Source: Ramazzottius varieornatus
Lineage: Eukaryota > Animalia > Tardigrada
NCBI GenBank assembly: GCA_001949185.1
Contig: BDGG01000002.1
Coordinates: 310,001-374,000, forward strand
Reading direction: 5' to 3'
DNA: 64,000 nucleotides
Shown piece by piece: positions 24,443 to 43,400 of this stretch. Every line of letters starts with the position of its first letter. Position 1 is the first letter of the stretch. The notes beneath the pieces were generated by a model. The model saw nothing but the letters and a program-made list of their open reading frames with translations, was not told the origin of the DNA and searched no databases. The position numbers and the translations under genes are program-made.

Positions 24443-27064
24443 GTGTCGAGAGTTCCCGCATTACCTGTTCCAGTCATTGATGAAAGGATACAATAAAGAC
24501 GAGTGGCCATCATATCAGGAAGGTAAAAGGCAATTAGTGGTACTTCACTGACAAGTTTATTGGTACTCCCTTGGATGATATTTCAGCTGACCGTTTCGTC
24601 GTTTGAATCGTTTACGACTAGAATAAAGGAAATGAGCAGCGCTCACTCGGTGCGCAACTAAGTTACGTTTCGTTTTGTTGGGGAAACAGGCATCGGAATA
24701 CCGACACGGGTGTACGTGGAAGTTTACATTGTCTCCATCAGTTCGGTGGATGCCGGCAGCATGGTAAGATTAGGTAAACAGTGAGCGTGATGATTATGCG
24801 AGGAAGACGATGGTTGGCACTGGCGTCATCAATTCCCTGGTGTCAGTGGCTTCGCTTACTTATGGCCTTCTTTCCTCGTTGGGGCGAGATAGGATTTTGT
24901 CGTCGATTTCTACTTGACACAACACTGGCGCGACCCTCGAATGCGCTTCTCGGAAAATATCTCCAAAATACTGGAGCTCCATCAGCTTCGGCAAATAAAG
25001 AAGCTGTGGCTACCCGACCCTTACATCATCAACTCCAAGTCAGGTATCGCCCCGCACTCCCCTCGGACAAGGCAGGCTGCCCACTTGACAGTTACTCTCA
25101 GCTTTCACTGACTTGACATTGGGCAAACATGCGCTGATTTCTCCTTTGTTTCCCTTTCCCCACAGCCTATTTCCATGAAGTGACCTTACCCAATCGCTTC
25201 GCCAGAATAACGCCGGAGGGCAACGTCACATACAACTCTCGGTAATGTGAAGCCATTTCACAACCTCAGACAAGTTCGTGATCTGAACCAGAACACGCAT
25301 GGAAAGTCTGAAAATTGTCCAATACAATTTTTGAAAATGTGGAATTTTTTGAATATAATATTTACTGGGTATAAAGTTGGTAAAATATACGTTGAAAGGT
25401 TTTGTGATCAGATGACACAACTAACGATTCTTTCTTCCTGTCTCTATTTATAGCCTCACAGCCAAATTGAGCTGCAATATGCAACTGCGGTTATACCCTA
25501 TGGACACACAAGAATGTGAAATTTACTTTGAGTCCTGTACGTGAGAAAGTCTTGCAGCCGGGCCGCTTGACGGCCTAAGCTGTCCAACATGCAAAGAAGC
25601 CCTTTCAGCCCGCTACAGCTCACCTCTGACCTTGCCGCTAATGGCTTCCTTTGTGTAGACGGATACTCGACGGAAATTTTGTACTTTCACTGGCACTGGG
25701 AAAGCGACAAGGCCTTCTCCATCACAGAAAACCTCGAGCTGCCGCAGTTCTTCATGTCGGCGCCAACGACCTTGGAATGTGTCGACAAATACTCGATGGG
25801 CAAGAAAGTCGCCCAAGATATCCTCGAAATACAGTAACATCATTATTTCCCTTTAGGTTTATTTTCCTGCCTCAAAGTTAAGCTAAAGTTCCAGCGCGAA
25901 CTGAGTTACCATCTGATCCAGACATATCTGCCGACCTTCCTCATCGTATCGATTTCATGGGTAAGCGTCTTTCTTTACTCTTGCCTAACGGCCAGCGTAA
26001 CACACACGCCTCCTGGCGTCACTTCCCTAATTAACAATCGACGCTAACGCAAACACTATAGTCCTTCCATCTCCAAACCATAATTCGCTCTTTTTTTCTC
26101 CTGCCTTGGCTCGTGAAGGTCAGCTTTTGGCTCAGTGTCGACGCCGTCCCTGCCAGGTAAGTTGGCCCATCAGCGTTAACTACGGTTGACCTTTGGATGC
26201 GCCCATTCAGCTTAACGGAGTTACCTGACCTTGATTAGGGTTTCACTGGGCATCACCACCCTCCTAACAATGACCACTTTGATTAGCGGCGCCAAACAAG
26301 GACTTCCGGCTGTCTCCTATATCAAGGTAAATATAGCGCTCTAGTGTGCCAAAGCCCATCAAAGTATTCTCCGGAAGGTACAGTACAGTCTTCTGTGTGG
26401 CTGAACAGGCTCTGGATGTCTGGATGGGTACCTGCACCTTCTTCGTCTTCTCGACACTACTGGAGTACGTTGTGGTGTCCAAAGTATCACGGAGAAAGAT
26501 ACCGATGGTGGTGCAGGCGCACCGTAACGTCGCCAGCCATCTTGCTCGAAGCCATACCTCCATTTCCCCTGGCGCCACCTTGAAATACGACAATGGCTAT
26601 CTAGCCAATGGTCCCAGCTCGGGGGAAAGAAATCACTTGCGATCTCGCAGATTGGTAAGGAACGTCCTTCACTGTCCCGTAGCTGAGAGCAACGTTTAAC
26701 AATATCAAGAGTTTAATTAACCCTGTCATTTACTGTACACTGTAAGCACCTCAATATGTTAATATATATCTACCCCTTTGAGTTTCTAGAAAGTCGAAAA
26801 CCTGTGGTCCATCTAGGGTATGCAGTTGTTTTCCCTTGTCTTTTGCAGAGTGATGGTTACGAGTACGATTCGGAGACTCCGCCGGAAGCGGCATTCCTAG
26901 CCTTGCCGGGTTCGGCCCGACCGATCGCCTCGACGGCTGCTCAACAAGCTAAACGCATTGATGTGATAGCGCGAGTTCTCTTCCCTTCATTGTTTGGAGC
27001 CTTTAACTTTGTCTATTGGATATATTACTTACTACAATCTTGGGATCAAGCAGGCGGCGAGTAA
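24443..27064 (+). CDS. Anion-selective Cys-loop channel subunit, copy A (GlyR/HisCl/pHCl-like; 5' end unresolved)
   Basis: [106 protein letters not shown]; candidate signal exon near 23420-23520. Confidence 0.93.
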
Positions 27065-32100: not shown

Positions 32101-35100
32101 TAATATAACTCTTCAGCCCACATCTTCCTTGGATTCTCCGCTCCTGCTCCTGGTCAGCTCGTGTAAACCATGTCAAACCCCCGCTTTCGCTCTCCCTTTC
32201 AGGCTTCACTGCAAGCTTTCTGGCTTCGTTACAGTAAAGGTATATTTCAATGTCATCCTCCACGCCGTCTTTCTTCCGCAAAAAACTCTCCGGAAAACAT
32301 TTTATCCTCCAATATATCCACCCCGACTTTCATGAGTAATATTAATACATTCCCCACAATGCACAATTGCAAACTCTGTGCTTTGTTATTCTAAGTCACG
32401 AGGACCTTCAGAGGCTTTTTTTCATGCTTACGTTGGAGTTATAGTTCCACAAAGAACGAAGTCTGTGGGGGGAGTATTTCCACAAGGAGCCTTGGCCATT
32501 TTGCTTCAAGTTTCGGCAAAAGATCAACAATATGGCTGATGGATGAATGGCATTGAATAGTCATAGCTCATTTCCATATACAGTGAACAGGGCATGCAGC
32601 AAAGGGTTCTTTGGGATTGTCGATATCGCTGCGCAGGCCTGAGCTTGGCGTTGGGGGGATGACCCTATGGATTGGGCTGCAGACTTTGAAGCCGTTGCTA
32701 ACACATGACAACGCTGGGTCGAGCTCTCCTCTCCTTCCAGCTTGGAGAAAGTCAGCGACGTCCATGCATACAGTGCAGCTCCTTCCTGATCCACGGCTCG
32801 ATGACGTACACTTCCTTGCCAGGCAGTCTTCCTTTCCTCTTGCGGCACTACAGTCTTGCCCCATCAGTGTTGGCTTTTCCTTGTTAGTACGCCGCCCCTA
32901 AAGCGTATTACCCTGCTCGAACAAATGGATGAACCTAATCTTTCTCCTGGCCAGATTTCTGCCTTTGATCGTACATTGTTCCAGCACACTGCTCCTTCCC
33001 TTCCATATTTTCCACGCTGCATATTTTCTTCCCATCTATCCATCCATTCATCACGTCATAAACTGTGCTGAAATGATGTGTAAATCTTGGCTTTCTCCCA
33101 ATTTTATGCCTGTCCTTGTCTGAACTGTCACTCGCGCTTTGACGCCAGTTGTTCGCAGGGTCTTTTGATAAGGAACATAGTCCTTGCGTGACGGACGGAC
33201 GGACGAACCGAGAAGGACGTTTAACGGACCAGCAAAGCTCCTTCCATCTCAGTGCCGTTGGAGGGATAATAGGCTGTCTAATTCGCCAAAAATCAAAAGT
33301 GTGCGAGGAAGGCAGCTAGCCGGCTTCGCCTCAATGCACCAGCAGCGGCGCTCTATCTTATTGCTCCATTCCGCCTCCATTTCAGCCCGCGCCTTCTTCC
33401 TGTCCATCAATGCGCCACTACAGTGGGGATAGACTTTCAGCGACTTTAGCTTCAATATCGGCTATTATGCTTGGGCCTTCCTTTTTACCATTTTGTCCTC
33501 ACTGTGGATCTGTGGAGCCACACGCCATCAATAGCTCGTTAATCTTTGGCATGACAGAGGTCGTGTTGGCAGCTGTTGCAGCACTGACTAGAATTCCTTC
33601 TCCATCTTCGGACGTGATACCCACCGTCGCGATCAACCTTGTCAGCGGTGGCAATTAAAGCGCGGCTTACGACGCTGTTGCCGACCTTGTAAACTCAGCG
33701 CTTCCCTTTCTCCACTGTGATCTACTCGCTCAAGACCGCCTTCCCCTCTCCCCGCCATGCTCCTCAAGAATCTCAGTATCATGCCGGTCTTTGTCAAATT
33801 CTGGACCTGGCTCTTCACCCTACACATTCTTCTCTCTGTCGGCAGGTATGTTATTCGTTCATACAATAGGGATGAACTGTAGAAAACTGTTACTGAAGCT
33901 GTTTGACGACCGAGGTTCGATGAAGAATGCGGCTGGAAAGTCCAGCAGAAAGACACGTTAAAATTTTCTACGATTTTTCCAGAAATCTTGTTGTCACGTG
34001 CGACATTGGGCAGAGGTCATTGCATGTGTATAAACTCGAAAGTTGTGTAAATCTCAAAATGGGTCCTTGAGACGGAGAAAGTCCAACGTAGGGGTAGTAC
34101 GAGCAAGGCAAATCAGGGCGAGCAGAGGCAACTTCCGATCGGAAATGTCGCAAGTGGACTCCAGCGACGACGGCGGTTTGCTTCGTCGTTAGTATCCAAC
34201 CGAATAAATTATCCTGCGCCACATTTGGCAACATCCTGCCCCTACACTGCCATCAGTGTGCCTTTTTGCACATGCTAATTAAAATAATGGTGAGTCGCCC
34301 ACTCTCGCCATCTACCCCGGTTTCAAATAAGTCCAGAACCTAACCAATGTTTTGGCGGAAACGAAATTATTTCAGTCATGACGACCTAAATGGCTGACAA
34401 GAAAACGATCTTTGAGTAGCGCAATCGCATATAGAGAATTACAAATGTGGGACAGCCCGGATAGGAAATGGCAGTTGCAGTCTCGGGGGATACAGCTTCC
34501 CGCTCCGTTTTTAACGATCTGCCCAACTTCAACTTGGAGGTTTTGTTTGGCCTTATGGCCATTACTGTTTGTTGGTGGTATTACGACCATCGACCGCAAC
34601 ATTGAAATGAGCTCTTCGATTTTGTTCCGCATTAATCTGGACCTCTCACCCACTCGCTCCCGGGCCTTTTTCTCGAACATCGCACTGGAAGGAAGTCTTC
34701 TTTCAAACAATCCAAAGCACAGTACTGGCTGACAGGGCATTCGTGCAAGTGGTGGTCAAGTCTGAGTGGTTTGGAGTGATGGATCGCCGGCCGGGTTTCG
34801 CGTGGAAGAGCATCGTCTAGGTAAACAGGCGGAAGGATGAGTGATGAGGCACAAAAGGGAGCATCCTCGAGGCAAACAAGGACCGCCAGCCTCAAGAGCT
34901 TTGCACAGCTGATGACCCAACGCTCGTTCCTCAGGTCCGCTCGCCCAGAAACACACAGCAAACCAAGAGGCCATTTTTTACAAATAATTTCATTTATCAA
35001 AATAAATTCCGTGGTCTGATCTCTGTCAAGTTTTCAATTAGGGAAACCTCGAGCACTCGCCTGGAGCACAAGCGACTTCGTCTACGTGTAGAAAATGCCG

Positions 35101-35264
35101 TCAAAAAATAGCCGAAACTTAGAGATCGCATAATATTTTCTATTTAATTTGCTAAACTAGAGTACTGTACATATAGTAACAATAAGGTATTACTGGAGAT
35201 GTAAACTGATTCTTTTGGTGGTGATTCGTTGCGTAGTATAACCTTGCGCGTGTTGTGATTGCAG

Positions 35265-37939
35265 TTGTCGGGAGTTCCCGCATTATCTATTCCAATCGTT
35301 GATGAAAGGGTACAATAAGGAAGAGTGGCCTTCATATCAAGAAGGTACTTGGGCCTTCCACAGAGAATCAACCTCAGTCATCTATAATGCATTATTTCTT
35401 AATGGTCCGCGCTATTGATCTTAATCCATGTAGGCCCTGGAAAACCCACGCGCGTGTACATCGAGATATTCATCGTCTCCATCAGCTCAATCAACGCTGA
35501 AAGCATGGTAAGCCCCATCTGGAAATTTGCCCGGTGCCGCTAAAACAGGAAAAAAAATACAATGGAACCTTTTTTTGCTGTCAGGATTATGTTGTCGATT
35601 TCCTTCTGACTCAGGTGAGCACAGTTTACGATCGAAACTCTTCCTCGAAAAATGGGGTGGAAATATCTTGTTGATGGAATTTGCAGCATTGGCGGGATCC
35701 GAGGTTACAGTTTTCGGAGAACGTGTCGAAAGTCTTAGAACTGCATCAACTGCGGCAAATCAAAAAGTTGTGGCTGCCCGATCCATACATAATCAATGCC
35801 AAATCAGGTGAAACGTGTGTGCTACAGTACTCTGTGCATGGCCCAGGGCAACGTATGAACTGGGAACCTGCCGCTTGCCGCCCAATCGAAGATGTTGACT
35901 TTACCTCCTTTTTTCTTCCCTTATCCTTATTAGCTTACTTCCACGAAATTACTTTGCCCAACCGATTTGCTCGCGTAACCACCAACGGCAACGTCACGTA
36001 CAACGCACGGTAAGTAAGACAATCCATTCTGCATAAATGGGACGTCGGTAAGCGACTTGAATATGATCCTTTTCTCAAGTGGCGCTGGCTTCCGGCCACT
36101 ATCAGTGCAAGTCTGCGCCACGTGGCAAAAAAGCCCAACTCGACAAGATTGCTTTACCCAGGTGGCGCCCACTTTCAGCCAGAAACATTGTACATGTGCG
36201 CCACTTGGGACAGAACAATCCGGTTTCATTAATTTGTCGACGTCCAAAAAGCCGGATATGAGAGCGAGGTACAAGTCTCGTAGCACCAAACTGGCCATCT
36301 TTGCTGGTTTGTGCTTCGTATAAAATTCTAGGGGGACTTTTCCACTGGGGACGTTTTCAGGTTGACGGCGAAGCTGAGTTGTCAAATGCAGCTGCGGCTG
36401 TATCCGATGGACACCCAAGAGTGCGAAATCTATTTGGAGTCATGTGAGTACAATTAAGTCCTGCGATACGGTTACTGCCCGCCAAGAACCATCTCCCTCC
36501 TTGGCTACTGTCACTGACGTTGCCGCCCAATATTCCCTTACAAATTGCTTCTTTGTCCCTTGCCCCTTCATGCAGATGGATACTCGACCGAGATTCTGTA
36601 CTTCCACTGGCATTGGGACGATGCAACGGCCTTTGACTTGGCGGAAAACCTCGAGTTGCCCAATTTTCTCATTGCCAACCGTACCAAGCTGGAGTGCGTC
36701 GATACGTACTCGATGGGTTAGTCGCCATCCAGCTTCTCCCTCCCTCTCTCTCTTTCTCTCTCCCCTAATTTAATTGTCCCACTACGTCTTTATCTTTTTT
36801 GCCGCAATCGATATTTCGCAGTTGGGAATCTTGACCTTATCCGATTTGTTTTTCTGCCACAGGATTATTCTCTTGCCTGAAAGTCAAGCTAAAGCTGGGT
36901 CGTCGTGTCAGCTATCATCTTACCCAAACTTATCTTCCAACTTTCCTCATCGTTTCCATTTCCTGGGTAAACACAACAGTCCAAGGCATCATGTTTCCCT
37001 TCCCACAAGGAGCAATGCTGAGGTTTTGCCGTTTCAGGTGACATTTTGGCTAAGTGTGGAAGCCGTACCTGCTCGGTAAGTTCTGCTGGAAACCCGCAGC
37101 CACTCTGTCAGAATCCCATCGCATCACATTGTAAAGCAAGACTATTGTAACTTGGCATTAATGGCCTGTGGATGGGTTCCTGCAGAGTCTCCCTGGGAAT
37201 CACCACGCTGCTGACAATGACGACACTGATTAGTGGGGCCAAGCAGGGCCTTCCCGCCGTCTCCTACATCAAAGCTCTCGATGTCTGGATGGGTCAGTAT
37301 ATACTGATAGATAGGCATGACGCCCCAGCGGAAGTTCTTGGTCGAGGGGTGGGCTTTAGTCCTGAGACTGTGTTATGAGAGGCATGAATTTTGATGAATA
37401 TACAGGTACCTGTACCTTCTTTGTCTTCTCAACGCTGCTGGAATACGTCATTGTATCCAAAGTGTCGCGGAGGAAGATGCCGACCTTCGTGGCCTCGAAG
37501 AATGCCAGCGGTAATAATCACGTCCCCCGCAGTCGCACACTGAGCTCGGGGACGGGCAAGTATGATCACAGCCAGTATGTGGCCACACCTAATCATCGGC
37601 CTTTGACGGCGACGGGCAAGTCACCCAGCCAGAACCATTTCCGACCGCACAAATTGGTAATGCCTCACGCAATGGGGAACGGCCAAAGCCAAGGTCATCA
37701 GGTTATGTTGTTTTTAGGCCATACCGCCGCAGAACGGAAGCTTTGAATTCGATCTGGAGTCGCCCCATCAAGAGACGTACACACCGGGACCCAACCGGAC
37801 AATGCTAAGCGCTGCTCAACAAGCCAAGAGAATCGACGTCATTGCACGCGTACTATTCCCCTCACTTTTTGGAGCCTTTAATTTCGTCTATTGGACCTAT
37901 TACCTCCTGCAGTCATGGGATCAAGAAGTCCACACTTGA
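35265..37939 (+). CDS. Anion-selective Cys-loop channel subunit, copy B (paralog of copy A; 5' end unresolved)
   Basis: [77 protein letters not shown]; candidate signal exon near 31413-31532. Confidence 0.93.
36077..36206. repeat. Doublet of the palindromic element (period 83 bp)
   Basis: Arms start at 36077/36114 and 36160/36197; 27-bp spacers; inside a copy B intron. Confidence 0.85.
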
Positions 37940-38590
37940 CACCCTGTACATATTATACAGATAGACTACTCGCATGCGCAATACAATACTACGCCTTTGA
38001 CAAAAAGCTTCGCTGCACTGGACAGAAAAGCTTGTGACACTTTGTCAGACAGTTATTAGTTTTAAGTTGCGGTGAAAAAAAGTAGTAGTAGCAGTACTAA
38101 CCAAGTAAGTAGGTGCTGAGACCATGCGGAAATGATGAGAGGCGTATATGGTAGTAACTGATGTCAGTGCGCGGCTTAGCAGGTGACAGCACCCGTCTGC
38201 ATTCCCATCATGTTAGCCTCGGCAAATTCCGTGGCCTCTCGACTGCGGAAGCGCCGCTGCCAGCGAGGAGTACTAGCGGCTGATTGGTTGTAAGTTGGTC
38301 GAAATGACGACAGAATGCTTGGTTAATTGATCAGATTATGATGGAGGAAGAAGAAAAAGTGACACAGTGTACTCCATCGGACAAGGCTCAGAGGCATCTG
38401 TTTGGCGACCTGGCCAACTAACCGTGGTGAACAGGACGGTCATGGCTGCATGCATGGGCATAACTATATGCAGGAAGTTTGGATCGTAATACATCCTGTT
38501 TGAAGATTGAGCTGCCTTTTTCAGTCTAACAGTATAGTATTGTACGCCTACCGCTAGTCTTGCAGTCTGGCTTTTGCTTGCTTCCGATGA

Positions 38591-39973
38591 ATGTACCTGC
38601 CAGCGTTCGGACTTTCAATATGGATGATCGCTGCTTTCGGGATTGTAAGCAGCCTGCTTGGTCGGTGTCGGGCCTATTGGTCGCCTACCAAATTGTTCAA
38701 CTCCTTGATGGAAGGATATGACCGAGAAGAATGGCCCACCTTCAACGGTAAGTGCAGCTGGCGTCTTCCTTGCAGTGGGTTCGATCCATGCCATACAAAG
38801 TCTACTTTGCCCATGCACGCGCAGTCAGCGGCCTTCCCACCTTGGTCAAAGTGCAAGTGGACATTCTGGCCATTGCAACGCCAACGCTGTGCAACACGGT
38901 ACGTAGCCCTGGCAGTCTTGGAGCTGTAGATAGATAGTCCAAGTCCGATCACCCGGTTGGAGTATTTGTAGGACTACACCATCCGCTTTTTGCTGGTGCA
39001 GCAATGGCTGGATCCGCGCCTGGCCTATACAGTGGACAACGGCACGCGGCCTTTGGAGCTGCACCGCCTGGACAATATCGAACGAATGTGGCTACCTGAC
39101 ACCTACATGGTCAACGCCAAACTAGGTACGGCATCACAAAAAGATACGACTAGCAAAAGCCTCATAGTTTTGCAGACATTTTAGCTGGCTTGCAAAAGAA
39201 AATGATCGAGGTTTAGTCTATTAATGGCACCAACTGTCCTGGACAAACTATGGTCTAATCCAAATCCTTAACAGCATTCTGGTACGATGTCACCGTGCCT
39301 CAACGCTACGTCCAGATCAGGCCCGATGGTCTGGTCACTTACGCCGCTCGGTACGTACCCAAGCTCAAGGCCTTGCCAACTCTGGCTGTCGAGCGTGGCT
39401 GGTGCTGTAGATACAGTCCGTTTGTAGGGTGACGGCCAACTTGATCTGCCGATCAGTGCTCTTTCCACTTCCGTCGCCCGAAACCCTGTGCGAAGTCCAT
39501 CTGGCCAGTTGTAAGTCTCTCTTCTAGTACAAGGTCCAGCATACAGCACAAGCCTTCCTTTCTTGACGTTGCTTGTTGTCTAGTCGGCTACACAGCGGAC
39601 AAGGTTCAGCTACAGTGGCACTGGGAAGCCTGGCCAGTGGCCATTGTCGGCGACCTAGAACTACCCGACTACGTCGCATCTGCACCCAAACTGGTGGAAT
39701 GCCTCATGCCCCTTCCCATCGGTGAGCCGTACTGTAGCACCTCTTCTTTTTCATACATCGATGGCCGCTTTTCATACCCATCATTTCTCGGCAGGTCCCT
39801 TCTCGTGTCTCCGCACAAAGATCAAGTTCCGACAAATACCGCTGCCCGATGGCCTGACAAGCTCCTTTGGGACGGGTTTGACATGTGACCAGTTGGCGGC
39901 AGCCGCGGCGGCTGCCGCATCTGCCAGTTTCATCCCCAAAGACCAGACACCTTCTGCCGTCTGGAAAAAGTGA
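38591..39973 (+). CDS. Secreted Cys-loop extracellular-domain-only protein (AChBP-like architecture, paralog of copies A/B), 7 exons, 286 aa
   Basis: Exons 38591-38747, 38825-38898, 38972-39125, 39275-39350, 39428-39510, 39584-39721, 39795-39973 splice in frame (861 nt); signal peptide, LMEGYDREEWP, QQWLDPRL, WLPDTY, C-x13-C, WHWE, FSCLRTKIKFRQ, then a short tail and stop with no M1-M4. Confidence 0.85.
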
Positions 39974-40488
39974 TATCGCCACCTTTCACTTTACGCACTG
40001 TATCTACAATTCTGCCTTTAAAATTAATAGTTTACCAAGTCGCCATCGCAATGATGTAATTGAAACAAACACTGACTTTTTCCTACCAACTGTCCATGCC
40101 AGTTTCTGATATGGTTCAGTCCACCGGGGGTTCACAACTGCGTTCCGCAGACTGATCGTCTGACTTTGGTGTCGCTTTTGCAGTCCTTGTATAATGCATC
40201 TTACGGTGGTCACGTGATACTTGTTACCATTGATTAGTGTTAGGAGTCATGTGACCACCAGTAGGGTAGCATACGGCGCACTGTATGGATATTTCCGCTA
40301 AGACATCGGTGAGTGAAATGGCCTGTACTGTCGTCAGAGGCCACAGGCTTTTTCGGACAATGACACTGAGAAGGTACCGGATAACGTTAACAAGGACAGA
40401 GGAGCCTACAGAAATACTAATGACCATAGGAGTGAGTTAAAGTGGATGAACAGGACGGATGAGAATCGTCCACCAAGAGAAGCACCGC

Positions 40489-43400
40489 TTAGTGGACGAC
40501 GATAACGGTCTCGGTCGTCGAGTTGAGGCCTGCACCCAGGTCGTTGAGTCGCGGTAACAAGGCGTGGGTGGTGTCGTCCTCCAGCACTTCTTGTATCCTC
40601 ATGGCTCGGCTGGCCCGCCGCTTCAGCCGTTGCTCCTCGTCCATCTTGGCCAGGAAGTCGCGCGACATGTGCTGGACGATACCGCAGCCGATAACGTCAC
40701 CCAATATATTCACCGTCGTACGAATGCGATCCCTACGGAAGGAATTAATGTCTAACTGCCAACGCTAGGAGGGAAGACAAATCATCTTAGGAACAGTGCG
40801 GCGACTTACAAGAACCAGTCGATGGCAAGAATCATCGTCACGAATTTGGCATCCAAACCAACGGCATCGAGGACCATGACCATCGTCACCAACCCTGCTT
40901 GCGGTACCTACAAGCAGAGTAAGGTATACTGCTTCCATTCTATCAGAAAAAAACAATGGGCTTCTATCTGTACCCCAGCAGCTCCAATGGCGGCAGCCGT
41001 GGCAGTAACACTGAAAAGAAAGCATGTGCATTACAACAGCGCCACCTGCATGGATGAAGTCAGGTGCTTTGACTTGGTTAAGTGACTTGACCGATCAAAG
41101 CAGTGGGAGCTCGCTAAACCAAACGCGACGAGCCCGCATTTTTGAGTGGCGCACGCTTGCAGTCAATGACACTGGTAGCGCGCGCCACTTGGGGTAACCA
41201 TGAACAAAACAAGATTGTTTTTCCAAGTGGCGCGCCCCACCTGCCAATCACACCGAAAAGGTGCGTCACTTGGAAAATTAATCTCGTCGGGCTTGTTTGG
41301 CGGACTCCCATGTAACGAACGTCGCGGATGCAGACCTACTAGTAAAATTGTTACGAACGGCCTGAGCATACCTGACGGCGATGATTTTGCCAAAGTCCAT
41401 GGGGACATTCTGCGTTTGAGCGATGAAGAGACACGCAACGGCCTCGTAAAGTGCCGTTCCTGCAAGAGAGTGGACCAGGTGGTGGTAATGGAAGATGGAG
41501 TACCTCTGTTGCCCGTAATGAGGCCCGGCTACTCACCATCCATATTAATGGTCGATCCTGCAATAAAACCCCTGGCGTTACCTCATGACCAGCCACAACT
41601 CGCAACTTGATCAAGGGAAGATTAGCGTACCGATGGGAAGCACAAAGCGACTTATCCTGCAACAAGAGAATCCACTTTCAGCTCGTCAAACTACCACTAT
41701 GAAACGGAAAACGGCCTAATTACCCAGGCGCGGACCAACTAACCTGGGATCAACACCGTAGTCCTCCACGCACTGCATCGTCAAGGGAAGGGTGGCCGAG
41801 GAAGAGCTGGTGGCGAACCCAGTGGCAAAGGCTTGCAAACAAGCTCCAATTATCTTGAATGGGTTCTTCCGCGTGAAAGCCACGTAAATGAGCGGAAGGA
41901 CGATGAAGGCATGGATAAGTAGCCCAGTCTGCAACATACATACGAACAACTCTAACCATAAGCTGCTATTGTTTCTCAGTTGAAGCGGTAAAACTTATAA
42001 TAGCCCATCGGTCGCTGGGTCATAAGACGTACCAATACAGTCATGAAATACATTCCCAGCTGTTCCAGCATTGCTTTGAAGTCTTGCACTTTCAACACCT
42101 GACCCGCAACTAAGAAAGTGATACCAAGGGGAGCCAGCCTGAGGAAGAGACGTGACACCGGTGAAACAGAGGCCACATTTCTACAGCTGCCATCAAACAA
42201 CTTCTCCTCTTACCACATGATGGTGCCGACAATACTCATGGTAATCTCGTTCAGGGACTCGAAGAACAGCTTCATGGCTTTGCCCTTCTCGCCGAGCCGA
42301 CTAATCGTGATACCTGAAAAGCAACTGGCTTTCTCGAAGTACGACAAAATATGCATGTATATGGACCAGTCCAAAGTTGGGTAGGCCCAGGCTCACCAAA
42401 AATAATACTGAAGACAACCAGGCCCATAATGTTGATGCCGTCAATAGTCTTGCCGGTAATGATGAATTTACTGTAATCGGGTAACTCAGAGCGGTTGGCC
42501 GCTTCCGCCTGCATGAAGGAAACGTTGACACCTTCGGGGACTTTCAGCACCGTCTTGTACTGCTGGAAGGTCGCTCCAACTAAGTTTGGCGGAAACATGT
42601 TTCTGTGAGAGAACGCAGCAAGGTTAGACCGATGCACTGAAAAGCTGACAGCGAGGAGAGAAATCACCGTATCAGGTCCAGGAAGGTATCGGGTGTGGTT
42701 ATGGGCTCGTGAGAGGAAGCCGAAGCAGGCACAACAATCTGCGTGCCATTCGCGTAATACTGTTTCACGTCACCAGGCCTTATGACGCTGACCAGGATGA
42801 TACCCAGGATGACGGCCATGAAGGTCGTCGTGAAGTAATAGACGACGGCTCGAAGGCCGATCTTGCCGCTGGTCGCCGATTCAAGGGCGGCCAGACCGGC
42901 CACCAGCGATGAGACGATTAACGGTAGAATGACAATCTTCAACATATTCAGAAAGATGTCTCCCACAAATGAGACATACATAACTTTGCGCGGATCCTCG
43001 TGGAAACCATGTGCTCGAAGGCCAAATCCCAAAGCTACAAAGAAAGCAGGCCAGATGAACCAAAGGCGCTCAACCAAGCGCATTCTACGTTGTACTCTGA
43101 AACTCGCGAATTTCAACGTGTTGCTCTGGCAGAAAGCGCGCCACTTGTCCGAGTCGGCTGTTCTTTAGAGAAGTGGCGCGACGTCAAACTCATTTTACTA
43201 CAGACGTGCGCCACCCCATCTGCGGCATTTATTTATTCTCACGGTGATCTTTCTTGAATTTTTGATTGAGTGTGATGTGTTGGTCGACACGCTATCTTGA
43301 CACGTAGAGCAATACGAAGAAATGGGAGAGCTGCAATCAATTTGTCAACACTCAGCGTCTGTTACAGCCACCCCAGATGATGTTGAATTATTCTCTGCTG

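What the first reader, a model, noticed from the sequence alone, without database searches (positions are those of the whole stretch)
38591..39973. Secreted ligand-binding protein derived from an anion-channel Cys-loop family (independent AChBP analogue) next to its parent receptors
Seen: a third paralog of copies A/B has a signal peptide and a complete extracellular domain. Seven exons splice in frame at GT-AG sites shared with copy A. The protein diverges exactly at pre-M1 (FSCLRTKIKFRQ) into a ~46-aa tail and stops, and no M1-M4 exons lie in the ~500 bp before the convergent EAAT stop. The membrane-facing surfaces are the ones remodelled: Cys-loop YPMD becomes LPSP (CRSVLFPLPSPETLC) and loop 2 SSVDAGSM becomes ATPTLCNT, while core motifs (WxDPRL, WLPD, WHWE, loop C Cys pair) persist. 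Known: molluscan/annelid AChBP is a soluble nicotinic-type domain with a remodelled Cys-loop that buffers transmitter. Inference: a separately evolved soluble buffer, decoy or modulator for the ligand of copies A/B, i.e. a receptor plus soluble-binder locus; I do not know of a natural one from the anion-channel branch.
Basis: partly seen in the sequence, partly recalled or inferred. Interest (0 to 1): 0.88.

Follow-up and report, generated by a model that had tools for sequence, protein, structure and literature searches.

The report
Channel-less receptor domain gene in tardigrade
A tardigrade gene encodes only the outer, ligand-binding half of a GABA/glycine-type receptor; it is transcribed, correctly spliced and strongly conserved, so it is a working stand-alone protein, probably secreted, whose ligand and role are unknown.

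Summary
Window 38591-39973 (+) carries a 7-exon, 286-aa gene. RNA contigs from four studies confirm all six GT-AG introns and run unspliced through the stop codon. The protein is identical to GenBank GAU91214.1 (RvY_03516, Ramazzottius varieornatus, "hypothetical protein"). It has a hydrophobic N-terminus, a complete Cys-loop extracellular domain and a 45-aa tail, but no M1-M4.

The best sequence and fold matches are GABA-A beta extracellular domains. No transmembrane exon lies on the + strand in the remaining 24 kb of the window.

An orthologous contig from a related species keeps the same exons, stop and neighbouring gene:
- Exons 2-7 have no indels.
- dN/dS is 0.06.
- The tail shows 9 synonymous and 0 non-synonymous changes.

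Decay, an assembly break and splicing on to transmembrane exons are therefore rejected.

- The protein is about 40% identical to copies A and B.
- It sits on a very long branch as sister to the whole A/B clade.
- It differs from A/B at several canonical pocket positions, so it is not shown to buffer their ligand.
- Secretion and pentamer formation were not tested.

I class it as a new variant of a known kind: an AChBP-like architecture from the anion-channel branch.

The parts
38390..38590 (+). 5' leader of the transcript, with five upstream ATGs (38442, 38450, 38454, 38468, 38587)
   Evidence: RNA contigs begin at 38390-38437 in four runs. Contigs cannot fix the true start.
38591..38747 (+). 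Exon 1: start codon, hydrophobic N-terminal segment (residues 3-23, presumed signal peptide), RCR motif and helix alpha-1
   Evidence: The Kyte-Doolittle 19-residue maximum is 1.99. The RCR-to-alpha-1 part aligns to A, B and Hypsibius B directly after their leaders.
38825..38898 (+). Exon 2: beta-1 and loop 2 (loop 2 = 38875-38898, replaced relative to A/B)
38972..39125 (+). Exon 3: beta-2 to beta-4 with the WxDPRL and WLPD motifs and the N100 sequon
   Evidence: Pfam PF02931, 29.9 bits against a cut-off of 26. PDB sequence matches to GABA-A delta/beta and GlyR. Sequons.
39275..39350 (+). Exon 4: beta-5/beta-6 region
39428..39510 (+). Exon 5: Cys-loop (C161-C175 = 39447-39491), with the invariant Pro kept and the family's Asp and Gln replaced
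39584..39721 (+). Exon 6: loop B, WHWE motif, loop F, first loop C cysteine (39700-39702)
39795..39835 (+). Exon 7, first part: second loop C cysteine and beta-10 up to FRQ (residue 241), the last residues homologous to receptors
39836..39973 (+). Exon 7, second part: 45-aa tail with an Ala-rich stretch, one Cys and a basic end, then the TGA stop (39971-39973)
   Evidence: Between species the tail shows 9 synonymous and 0 non-synonymous changes, and the stop is conserved. Kyte-Doolittle maximum 1.28. pLDDT 38-64 with a helix at 258-271. There is no other copy in the genome.
39974..40133 (+). 3' untranslated region (minimum extent)
   Evidence: The X13 contig ends at 40133. In three runs the contig runs on into the 3' end of the convergent gene.
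24447..27049 (+). Copy A: full-length paralogue (extracellular exons 24447-25975, then M1-M4)
   Evidence: It is 40% identical to the target in the extracellular domain.
35261..38083 (+). Copy B: full-length paralogue. Its transcript ends about 300 bp before the target's begins.
   Evidence: RNA joints and contig ends.
40492..40731 (-). Last coding exon of the convergent sodium:dicarboxylate-symporter (EAAT-type) gene, which bounds the locus
Evidence: It is conserved in the relative, with dN/dS 0.2.

Best explanation

**Shown**
- It is transcribed from its own start.
- It is spliced into one 7-exon mRNA whose stop lies directly after beta-10 plus a 45-aa tail.
- The reading frame, tail included, is held by strong purifying selection in two Ramazzottius lineages.
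- The domain fold, both disulfide pairs and two N-glycosylation sequons are kept.
- The residues that normally couple the domain to the membrane pore are replaced.

**Inferred**
- The hydrophobic N-terminus is a cleaved signal peptide, as in its full-length relatives. The product would therefore enter the secretory pathway and leave the cell as a soluble protein.
- Like AChBP, it would work by binding something at its subunit interfaces rather than by gating ions.
- Its pocket differs from copies A and B at several contact positions. Its ligand is therefore more likely different from theirs than the same.
For: - **Gene model and splicing.**: six joints, four studies, and a contig continuous through the stop.
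- **Public record.** The model is identical to the 286-aa protein GAU91214.1 / A0A1D1UND8.
- **Orthologous contig L001, 88% nucleotide identity, same gene order.**
  - Exons 2-7 are 93-97% identical with 0 indels. Introns are 82-87% identical with indels. The 3'UTR is 84% identical.
  - dN/dS is 0.06, with dS 0.225 and 34 synonymous against 7 non-synonymous changes. The tail has 9 against 0.
  - The binomial P values are 1e-14 for the whole and 4e-6 for the tail.
  - The neighbouring transporter exon, as a control, has dN/dS 0.2.
- **Family.** Pfam PF02931. PDB sequence hit to GABA-A beta2, E=8e-29 over residues 37-238. AlphaFold2 pLDDT is above 88 over most of the domain. Foldseek rmsd to GABA-A beta extracellular domains is 1.7-1.8 A over about 210 columns.
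- **No transmembrane part.**. Tail hydropathy of 1.28 is below the usual 1.6 threshold, and the C-terminus is hydrophilic, so no GPI-type signal.
- **Secretory features.** Sequons at N52 and N100, and an RCR motif right after the hydrophobic segment, as in the leaders of full-length relatives.
- **Coupling residues lost.**
- **Language-model lead only.** The nearest Atlas clusters are extracellular-domain-only families, one of them molluscan and AChBP-sized.
Against: - No signal-peptide or topology predictor was run. The N-terminal flank has no positive charge, and the hydrophobic run is long (about 21 residues).
- The leader carries five upstream ATGs, one overlapping the start, so translation may be inefficient.
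- Oligomerisation is untested: the one complex job gave no verdict.
- No ligand is known even for copies A and B.
- Only one other lineage with the gene was found, and its exon 1 is not on the contig.
- There is no protein-level evidence.
Confidence: 0.55

Rival explanations
1. It is an intracellular assembly partner. The channel-less subunit would co-assemble in the endoplasmic reticulum with full-length subunits (A, B or others). It would lower or alter the surface receptors, a dominant-negative or chaperone-like modulator, rather than act as a secreted binder.
For: - It is encoded beside two full-length relatives of the same tardigrade subfamily.
- Core framework residues of the domain are kept.
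- The conserved tail with a free cysteine could mediate retention or pairing.
- Truncated subunits of other Cys-loop receptors are known to act this way (my own knowledge, not checked here).
Against: - It is only 39-40% identical to A and B after a very long branch, so the interfaces may no longer match.
- No ER-retention motif is evident at the C-terminus (sequence read directly).
- In the runs laid, its contigs are deeper than those of copy B. The tool warns that such depths must not be used to rank genes.
Confidence: 0.2
2. It is a membrane-tethered extracellular domain. The long N-terminal hydrophobic segment would stay uncleaved as an anchor, or the Ala-rich tail would associate with the membrane, so the domain would act at the cell surface and not in solution.
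For: - The hydrophobic run spans residues 3-23, and the model gives a helix at 7-23.
- The model also gives an Ala-rich helix at 258-271.
Against: - The positive charges lie after, not before, the N-terminal segment. An uncleaved anchor would then tend to put the domain in the cytosol, which conflicts with its disulfides and sequons (inference from the positive-inside rule).
- The tail's hydropathy maximum is 1.28, with only about 14 apolar residues.
- Homologous receptors carry a cleaved leader at the same place.
Confidence: 0.12
3. It is a transcribed partial duplicate with no protein function (an expressed pseudogene).
For: - It lacks the channel half.
- Its leader is rich in upstream ATGs.
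- No orthologue was found outside Ramazzottius.
- Hypsibius carries a clearly partial copy (TM half only) at the same locus, so partial duplications do occur there.
Against: - dN/dS is 0.06, with no indel in 699 aligned coding bases, while introns and the UTR carry many. The tail has 9 synonymous and 0 non-synonymous changes.
- All splice sites and the stop are conserved.
Confidence: 0.03
4. The gene model is incomplete: the transmembrane exons lie elsewhere, or an assembly break hides them.
For: None was found. Four further splice joints in the laid region were not displayed.
Against: - Contigs from four studies read through the stop into the 3'UTR.
- An independent contig of a related species has the same stop, UTR and convergent neighbour.
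- There is no TM-like sequence on the + strand for 24 kb.
Confidence: 0.02

Closest known systems
Acetylcholine-binding protein (AChBP) of molluscs and an annelid, with a putative spider AChBP (PMC4569296 and its references 46 and 47)
   Same: - A stand-alone gene for a Cys-loop receptor extracellular domain with an N-terminal leader and no M1-M4.
- The Cys-loop is altered where it would touch the membrane domain.
- Similar length (AChBPs are about 210-250 aa; this protein is 286 aa with its tail).
- Language-model features place the protein nearest to extracellular-domain-only clusters (a lead only).
   Different: - It comes from the GABA-A/glycine/GluCl branch, not the nicotinic branch.
- It has no vicinal Cys pair in loop C. 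Instead it has the glycine/GluCl-type second disulfide.
- It carries a conserved 45-aa C-terminal tail.
- Secretion, pentamer formation and ligand binding are unproven.
Tardigrade 'glycine receptor alpha-like' subunits: window copies A and B, Hypsibius exemplaris P0034 and P0035, Paramacrobiotus metropolitanus XP_055332699.1
   Same: - Same tardigrade-specific clade (support 99/99).
- Same six intron positions and phases as copy A.
- Same disulfides, the shared WHW motif after loop B, and a sequon in the same loop.
   Different: - 39-40% identity, against 81% between A and B.
- No M1-M4.
- The Cys-loop Asp and Gln and the pre-M1 Arg are replaced.
- Pocket positions in loops B, C and D are changed.
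GABA-A receptor beta subunit extracellular domain (e.g. 6D6T, 4COF)
   Same: It is the best solved match by sequence (E=8e-29) and by fold (rmsd 1.7-1.8 A, about 30% identity).
   Different: - It is not a channel subunit.
- The loop B Glu and the loop C Phe/Thr/Tyr equivalents are replaced by Ala, Leu, Ile and Phe (alignment).

Membership tests
Cys-loop / pentameric ligand-gated channel extracellular domain (Pfam PF02931) | Profile match above the curated cut-off | tested here: met
   Exon 3 alone scores 29.9 bits against a cut-off of 26. The database record carries PF02931.
Cys-loop / pentameric ligand-gated channel extracellular domain (Pfam PF02931) | Cys-x13-Cys loop with the invariant proline, and the beta-sandwich fold | tested here: met
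   C161-x13-C175 with P169. AlphaFold2 model and Foldseek hits, rmsd 1.7-1.8 A.
Complete pentameric ligand-gated ion channel subunit | Four transmembrane helices M1-M4 (Pfam PF02932) after beta-10 | tested here: not met
   The stop comes 45 codons after beta-10 in the mRNA. There is no PF02932 or TM-like match downstream, and the tail hydropathy is 1.28.
Complete pentameric ligand-gated ion channel subunit | Conserved coupling residues (Cys-loop Asp, pre-M1 Arg) | tested here: not met
   Asp>Pro at 171 and Gln>Thr at 173, both invariant in 75 relatives. The pre-M1 Arg position holds Gln.
Anion-channel branch (GABA-A / glycine / GluCl type) | Closest relatives by sequence, fold and tree are anion-channel subunits | tested here: met
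Anion-channel branch (GABA-A / glycine / GluCl type) | Second disulfide within loop C (glycine/GluCl type) | tested here: met
   C221 and C232, with the same 12-residue spacing as in copy A and the glycine-receptor-like rows.
AChBP family | Leader plus extracellular domain only, encoded by its own gene | tested here: met
   The leader is inferred from hydropathy and position.
AChBP family | Descent from nicotinic-type subunits, with a vicinal Cys pair in loop C | tested here: not met
   The tree and best hits place it in the anion branch. It has no adjacent cysteines.
AChBP family | Secreted soluble homopentamer that binds transmitter | not testable with these tools
   The one complex job returned no verdict. 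No secretion or ligand data exist.

The most novel reading that the evidence does not exclude
Ramazzottius makes a secreted, soluble, oligomeric ligand-binding protein that evolved independently of AChBP from the GABA/glycine-type branch of Cys-loop receptors. That would make it a natural soluble surrogate for the extracellular domain of an inhibitory receptor. It would have its own ligand specificity, and its conserved Ala-rich tail would take the place of the membrane domain.
Probability: 0.35. Interest if true: 0.8.

Novelty: new variant of a known kind. Interest (0 to 1): 0.62.

Why it matters
Soluble extracellular-domain proteins have been very useful. AChBP gave the first atomic view of the nicotinic binding site and is still engineered to imitate other receptors, including glycine receptors (PMC6830221).

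All natural examples I could find cited come from the nicotinic side: molluscs, one annelid and a putative spider protein (PMC4569296). A naturally soluble domain from the GABA/glycine side would matter in two ways:
- It would be a second, independent origin of this architecture.
- It could serve as a structural and pharmacological surrogate for inhibitory receptors.

It would also be a clean case of a receptor fragment that diverged fast and then came under tight constraint.

There are limits. The gene is already in GenBank as a hypothetical protein. It is known from only two Ramazzottius lineages. The Atlas also lists other extracellular-domain-only clusters in arthropods, whose branch I could not determine. 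A claim that this is the first of its kind is therefore not established.

Tried and rejected
- **Complex prediction.** Two copies of residues 27-241 scored 0.02, and the tool gave no verdict. This is neither support nor evidence against self-association.
- **First whole-protein word search.** It returned only the protein itself and one 157-aa fragment. I suspect the poly-Ala words swamped the candidate list.
- **Repeat search on residues 30-241.** It found 185 candidates, and only the protein itself passed. No close annotated relative of 157-500 aa is therefore detectable by shared words.
- **Tail against M1 DNA.** Local DNA alignment of the tail and downstream DNA against exon 7/M1 of A and B gave only chance-level matches. 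The origin of the tail (breakpoint, frameshift or new sequence) is undetermined.
- **My first two automatic exon-chaining scripts.** They failed because tblastn reads through the short in-frame introns. I replaced them with ungapped HSP chaining plus inspection of the splice sites.
- **Enrichment in membrane-facing loops.** The excess of replaced conserved residues there is not significant (p=0.25).
- **Hypsibius syntenic region.** It has no target-like domain, only a TM-half copy of B.
- **Literature searches.** I found no paper on this gene and none describing a natural soluble domain from the anion branch. The library is incomplete, so this is weak evidence of absence.
After that I used coordinates only.

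Full report
**What is in the sequence**

The window is part of contig 2 of a 55.8-Mb, 200-contig genome. A database hit later identified the genome as Ramazzottius varieornatus.

Pfam scans of the genome place five Cys-loop receptor genes in the window:
- one near 16.8 kb (+);
- copy A at about 24.4-27.0 kb (+);
- copy B at about 35.3-38.1 kb (+);
- the target at 38.6-40.0 kb (+);
- one on the minus strand at 54.7-57.5 kb.

All except the target have matches to the transmembrane family PF02932. The gene near 16.8 kb was not examined for this.

The target's seven exons join in frame into 286 codons plus TGA, with six GT-AG introns of 73-149 bases. Their coordinates are 38591-38747, 38825-38898, 38972-39125, 39275-39350, 39428-39510, 39584-39721 and 39795-39973.

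**Transcription and splicing**

Contigs of four runs from four different studies were laid on 35100-41000. The runs' libraries are not on record as RNA, but the contigs are spliced.
- All four runs show the six predicted joints at exactly the predicted positions.
- The contigs begin at 38390-38437.
- The last exon is continuous from 39794 through the stop codon.
- In run X13 that contig ends at 40133, and a separate contig of the convergent gene begins at 40213.
- In the other three runs the two convergent 3' ends are merged into one contig.
- No displayed joint leaves exon 6 or 7 for another exon. Four weaker joints in the laid region were not displayed.
- Copy B has its own contigs, which end at 38083, so the target is not a read-through of B.
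- Two contigs retain intron 1 or intron 2, which is common for unprocessed RNA.
- The target's contigs are deeper than those of copy B. The tool warns that such depths cannot rank genes, and the runs were chosen because they hold the target, so I draw nothing firm from this.

**How the spliced model was searched**

I never handed a self-joined sequence to a search, fold or complex tool.

The exon 3 search returned a public 286-aa protein, P0002. It is letter for letter the seven-exon model. Its identifiers are GAU91214.1, RvY_03516 and UniProt A0A1D1UND8, and it is named 'hypothetical protein'. All whole-protein searches, the fold and the complex job used that database record.

Joined coding sequences of the target, its relative and the extracellular parts of copies A and B were built only inside scripts, from coordinates. 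They were used for local alignment, the tree and the dN/dS calculation.

**Conservation**

The same exon 3 search found an 80-aa open frame from a Logan assembly (run SRR28173874). Its 3774-base contig, L001, aligns to window 38784-42500 at 88% identity. It therefore comes from a related lineage and holds exons 2-7, the 3'UTR and the convergent gene in the same order.

| Region | Identity | Indels |
|---|---|---|
| Exons 2-7 | 93-97% | none |
| Five internal introns | 82-87% | 1-18 gapped columns each |
| 3'UTR and intergenic stretch | 84% | 30 gapped columns |

All splice sites and the stop codon are kept.

Nei-Gojobori counts over 233 codons give 34 synonymous and 7 non-synonymous differences. 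That is dS 0.225, dN 0.0135 and dN/dS 0.06. The 45-codon tail has 9 synonymous and no non-synonymous differences.

Under neutrality these counts have binomial probabilities of about 1e-14 for the whole and 4e-6 for the tail. The last exon of the neighbouring transporter gene, used as a control, gives dN/dS 0.2.

The frame, novel tail included, is therefore read as protein and is under strong constraint. The same contig also rules out an assembly artefact at the 3' end.

**Family and history**

- Exon 3 matches Pfam Neur_chan_LBD above its cut-off.
- The best solved sequences are GABA-A beta subunits (E=8e-29 over residues 37-238), followed by delta, glycine-receptor and GluCl chains.
- An AlphaFold2 model built on a 76-row alignment has mean pLDDT 82. 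Most blocks of the domain are above 88, and the tail is at 38-64 with a predicted helix at 258-271.
- Foldseek superposes the model on GABA-A beta extracellular domains at 1.7-1.8 A over about 210 columns.

A maximum-likelihood tree was built on 209 columns of the extracellular domain.
- The target and its relative form a pair on a stem of 1.79 substitutions per site.
- That pair is sister, at moderate support (82/75), to a clade holding a Paramacrobiotus subunit, copy A with one Hypsibius subunit, and copy B with another.
- All of these lie inside a well-supported tardigrade clade (99/99).
- The target is 40% identical to A and 39% identical to B, whereas A and B are 81% identical to each other.

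The A/B duplication therefore predates the Ramazzottius-Hypsibius split, and the target is not a recent copy of either. It either branched earlier or evolved very fast after losing its channel. Long-branch effects prevent a choice between the two.

The six intron positions and phases are those of copy A. Copy B has one extra intron, confirmed by RNA, and A's sixth intron uses a GC donor.

In Hypsibius exemplaris the syntenic region holds an ShK-containing receptor gene, the A and B orthologues and then a transmembrane-half copy of B. No target-like domain is there. No second copy of the target or of its tail exists in the R. varieornatus genome. Word-based searches found no other annotated relative.

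**What has changed in the protein**

Forty-one positions of the domain are conserved in at least 80% of 75 relatives. The target keeps 26 of them, including both Cys-loop cysteines, the invariant proline, and residues of the WxDxRL and WxPD motifs.

Among the 15 replaced positions:
- Three are conserved in at least 99.5% of the 75 relatives: Asn>Gln at 138, and the Cys-loop Asp>Pro at 171 and Gln>Thr at 173.
- The pre-M1 arginine position holds glutamine.
- Loop 2 is rewritten.

These are the elements that contact the membrane domain in channels, so coupling has been abandoned.

The excess of changes in those loops over the rest of the domain is not significant, however (Fisher p=0.25). Pocket positions changed as well. 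Relative to A/B:
- loop D has Tyr>Leu and Thr>Val;
- loop B has Glu>Ala and Tyr>Phe;
- loop C has Tyr>Leu within a proline-rich loop.

A and B themselves lack the loop D arginine that binds the carboxylate of glycine, GABA or glutamate, so even their agonist is unclear.

**Topology**

- Residues 3-23 are the only strongly hydrophobic stretch (Kyte-Doolittle maximum 1.99).
- They are followed by an RCR motif that aligns with the same motif directly after the leaders of full-length relatives.
- Two N-glycosylation sequons (N52, N100) and seven cysteines are present.
- The tail's hydropathy maximum is 1.28, with only about 14 apolar residues. The C-terminus is basic and hydrophilic, so neither a membrane helix nor a GPI signal is predicted.
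- I had no signal-peptide predictor.
- The N-terminal flank lacks positive charge, and the leader RNA has five upstream ATGs, one overlapping the start. Cleavage, secretion and translation efficiency therefore remain inferences.

**Reading**

The core claim is well supported: this is a real, constrained gene for an extracellular domain without a channel. I put it near 0.9.

Beyond that core:
- The most likely mode of action is that of a secreted binding protein (0.55 for the whole statement).
- The main rival is an intracellular or surface partner of full-length subunits.

The complex prediction gave no verdict and is not evidence either way.

**Comparison and novelty**

The architecture is that of AChBP, which has been reported from molluscs, one annelid and putatively a spider, all on the nicotinic side (PMC4569296). 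The target fails the AChBP membership features of nicotinic descent and a vicinal loop C cysteine pair. It is an analogue, not a member.

I found no paper on this gene and none on a natural soluble domain from the anion branch. The library is partial, though. The Atlas also lists extracellular-domain-only clusters in arthropods, whose branch is unknown to me.

The gene model itself is already public. I therefore class the finding as a new variant of a known kind, of moderate to high interest.

Noticed in passing
L003:17302-18306 (Hypsibius exemplaris MTYJ01000026.1): Directly after the Hypsibius orthologue of copy B lies a second set of beta-10/M1-M4 exons. It is nearly identical to B's own, starts exactly at the exon that corresponds to the target's exon 7, and is annotated as a separate 237-aa gene. 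It could be a partial tandem duplicate or an alternative 3' exon set.
   Followed up: partly
window 25800-25856: Intron 6 of copy A appears to use a GC-AG splice pair: the exon ends at 25799 and is followed by GCAAGA. The only nearby GT would break the frame. No RNA was laid on copy A to confirm this.
   Followed up: partly
window 35615-35686: Copy B has an extra 72-base intron that splits the exon which is single in copy A, in the target and, as far as tblastn shows, in Hypsibius. It is confirmed by an RNA joint in run X2, so it is probably a recent intron gain.
   Followed up: partly
window 35261: A copy B contig continues upstream of an acceptor at 35261 with 255 letters that lie outside the laid stretch. 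B's leader peptide is therefore on a separate upstream exon, whereas the target has start codon, leader and helix alpha-1 in one exon. Stop codons lie just upstream of the RCR codons in both A and B.
   Followed up: no
window 38442-38590: The target's 5' leader holds four short upstream reading frames (11-17 codons). A fifth starts at 38587, four bases before the main ATG, out of frame and 44 codons long. This may mean translational control.
   Followed up: no
window 39974-40491: The target and the convergent transporter gene have 3' ends so close that three of four transcriptome assemblies merge them into one contig. In the fourth run the gap is only 40134-40212. No canonical AATAAA-type signal was found after the target's stop.
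   Followed up: partly
window 38718-38853 and 38870-39000: Separate contigs retain intron 1 (run X1) and intron 2 (run X13) of the target. This could be unspliced precursor or minor retained-intron forms.
   Followed up: no
window 24447-27049 and 35261-38083: The R. varieornatus proteins for copies A and B did not appear among the relatives of the Paramacrobiotus homologue in the protein database, although the Hypsibius ones did. Their public gene models may be missing, fused or mis-predicted.
   Followed up: no
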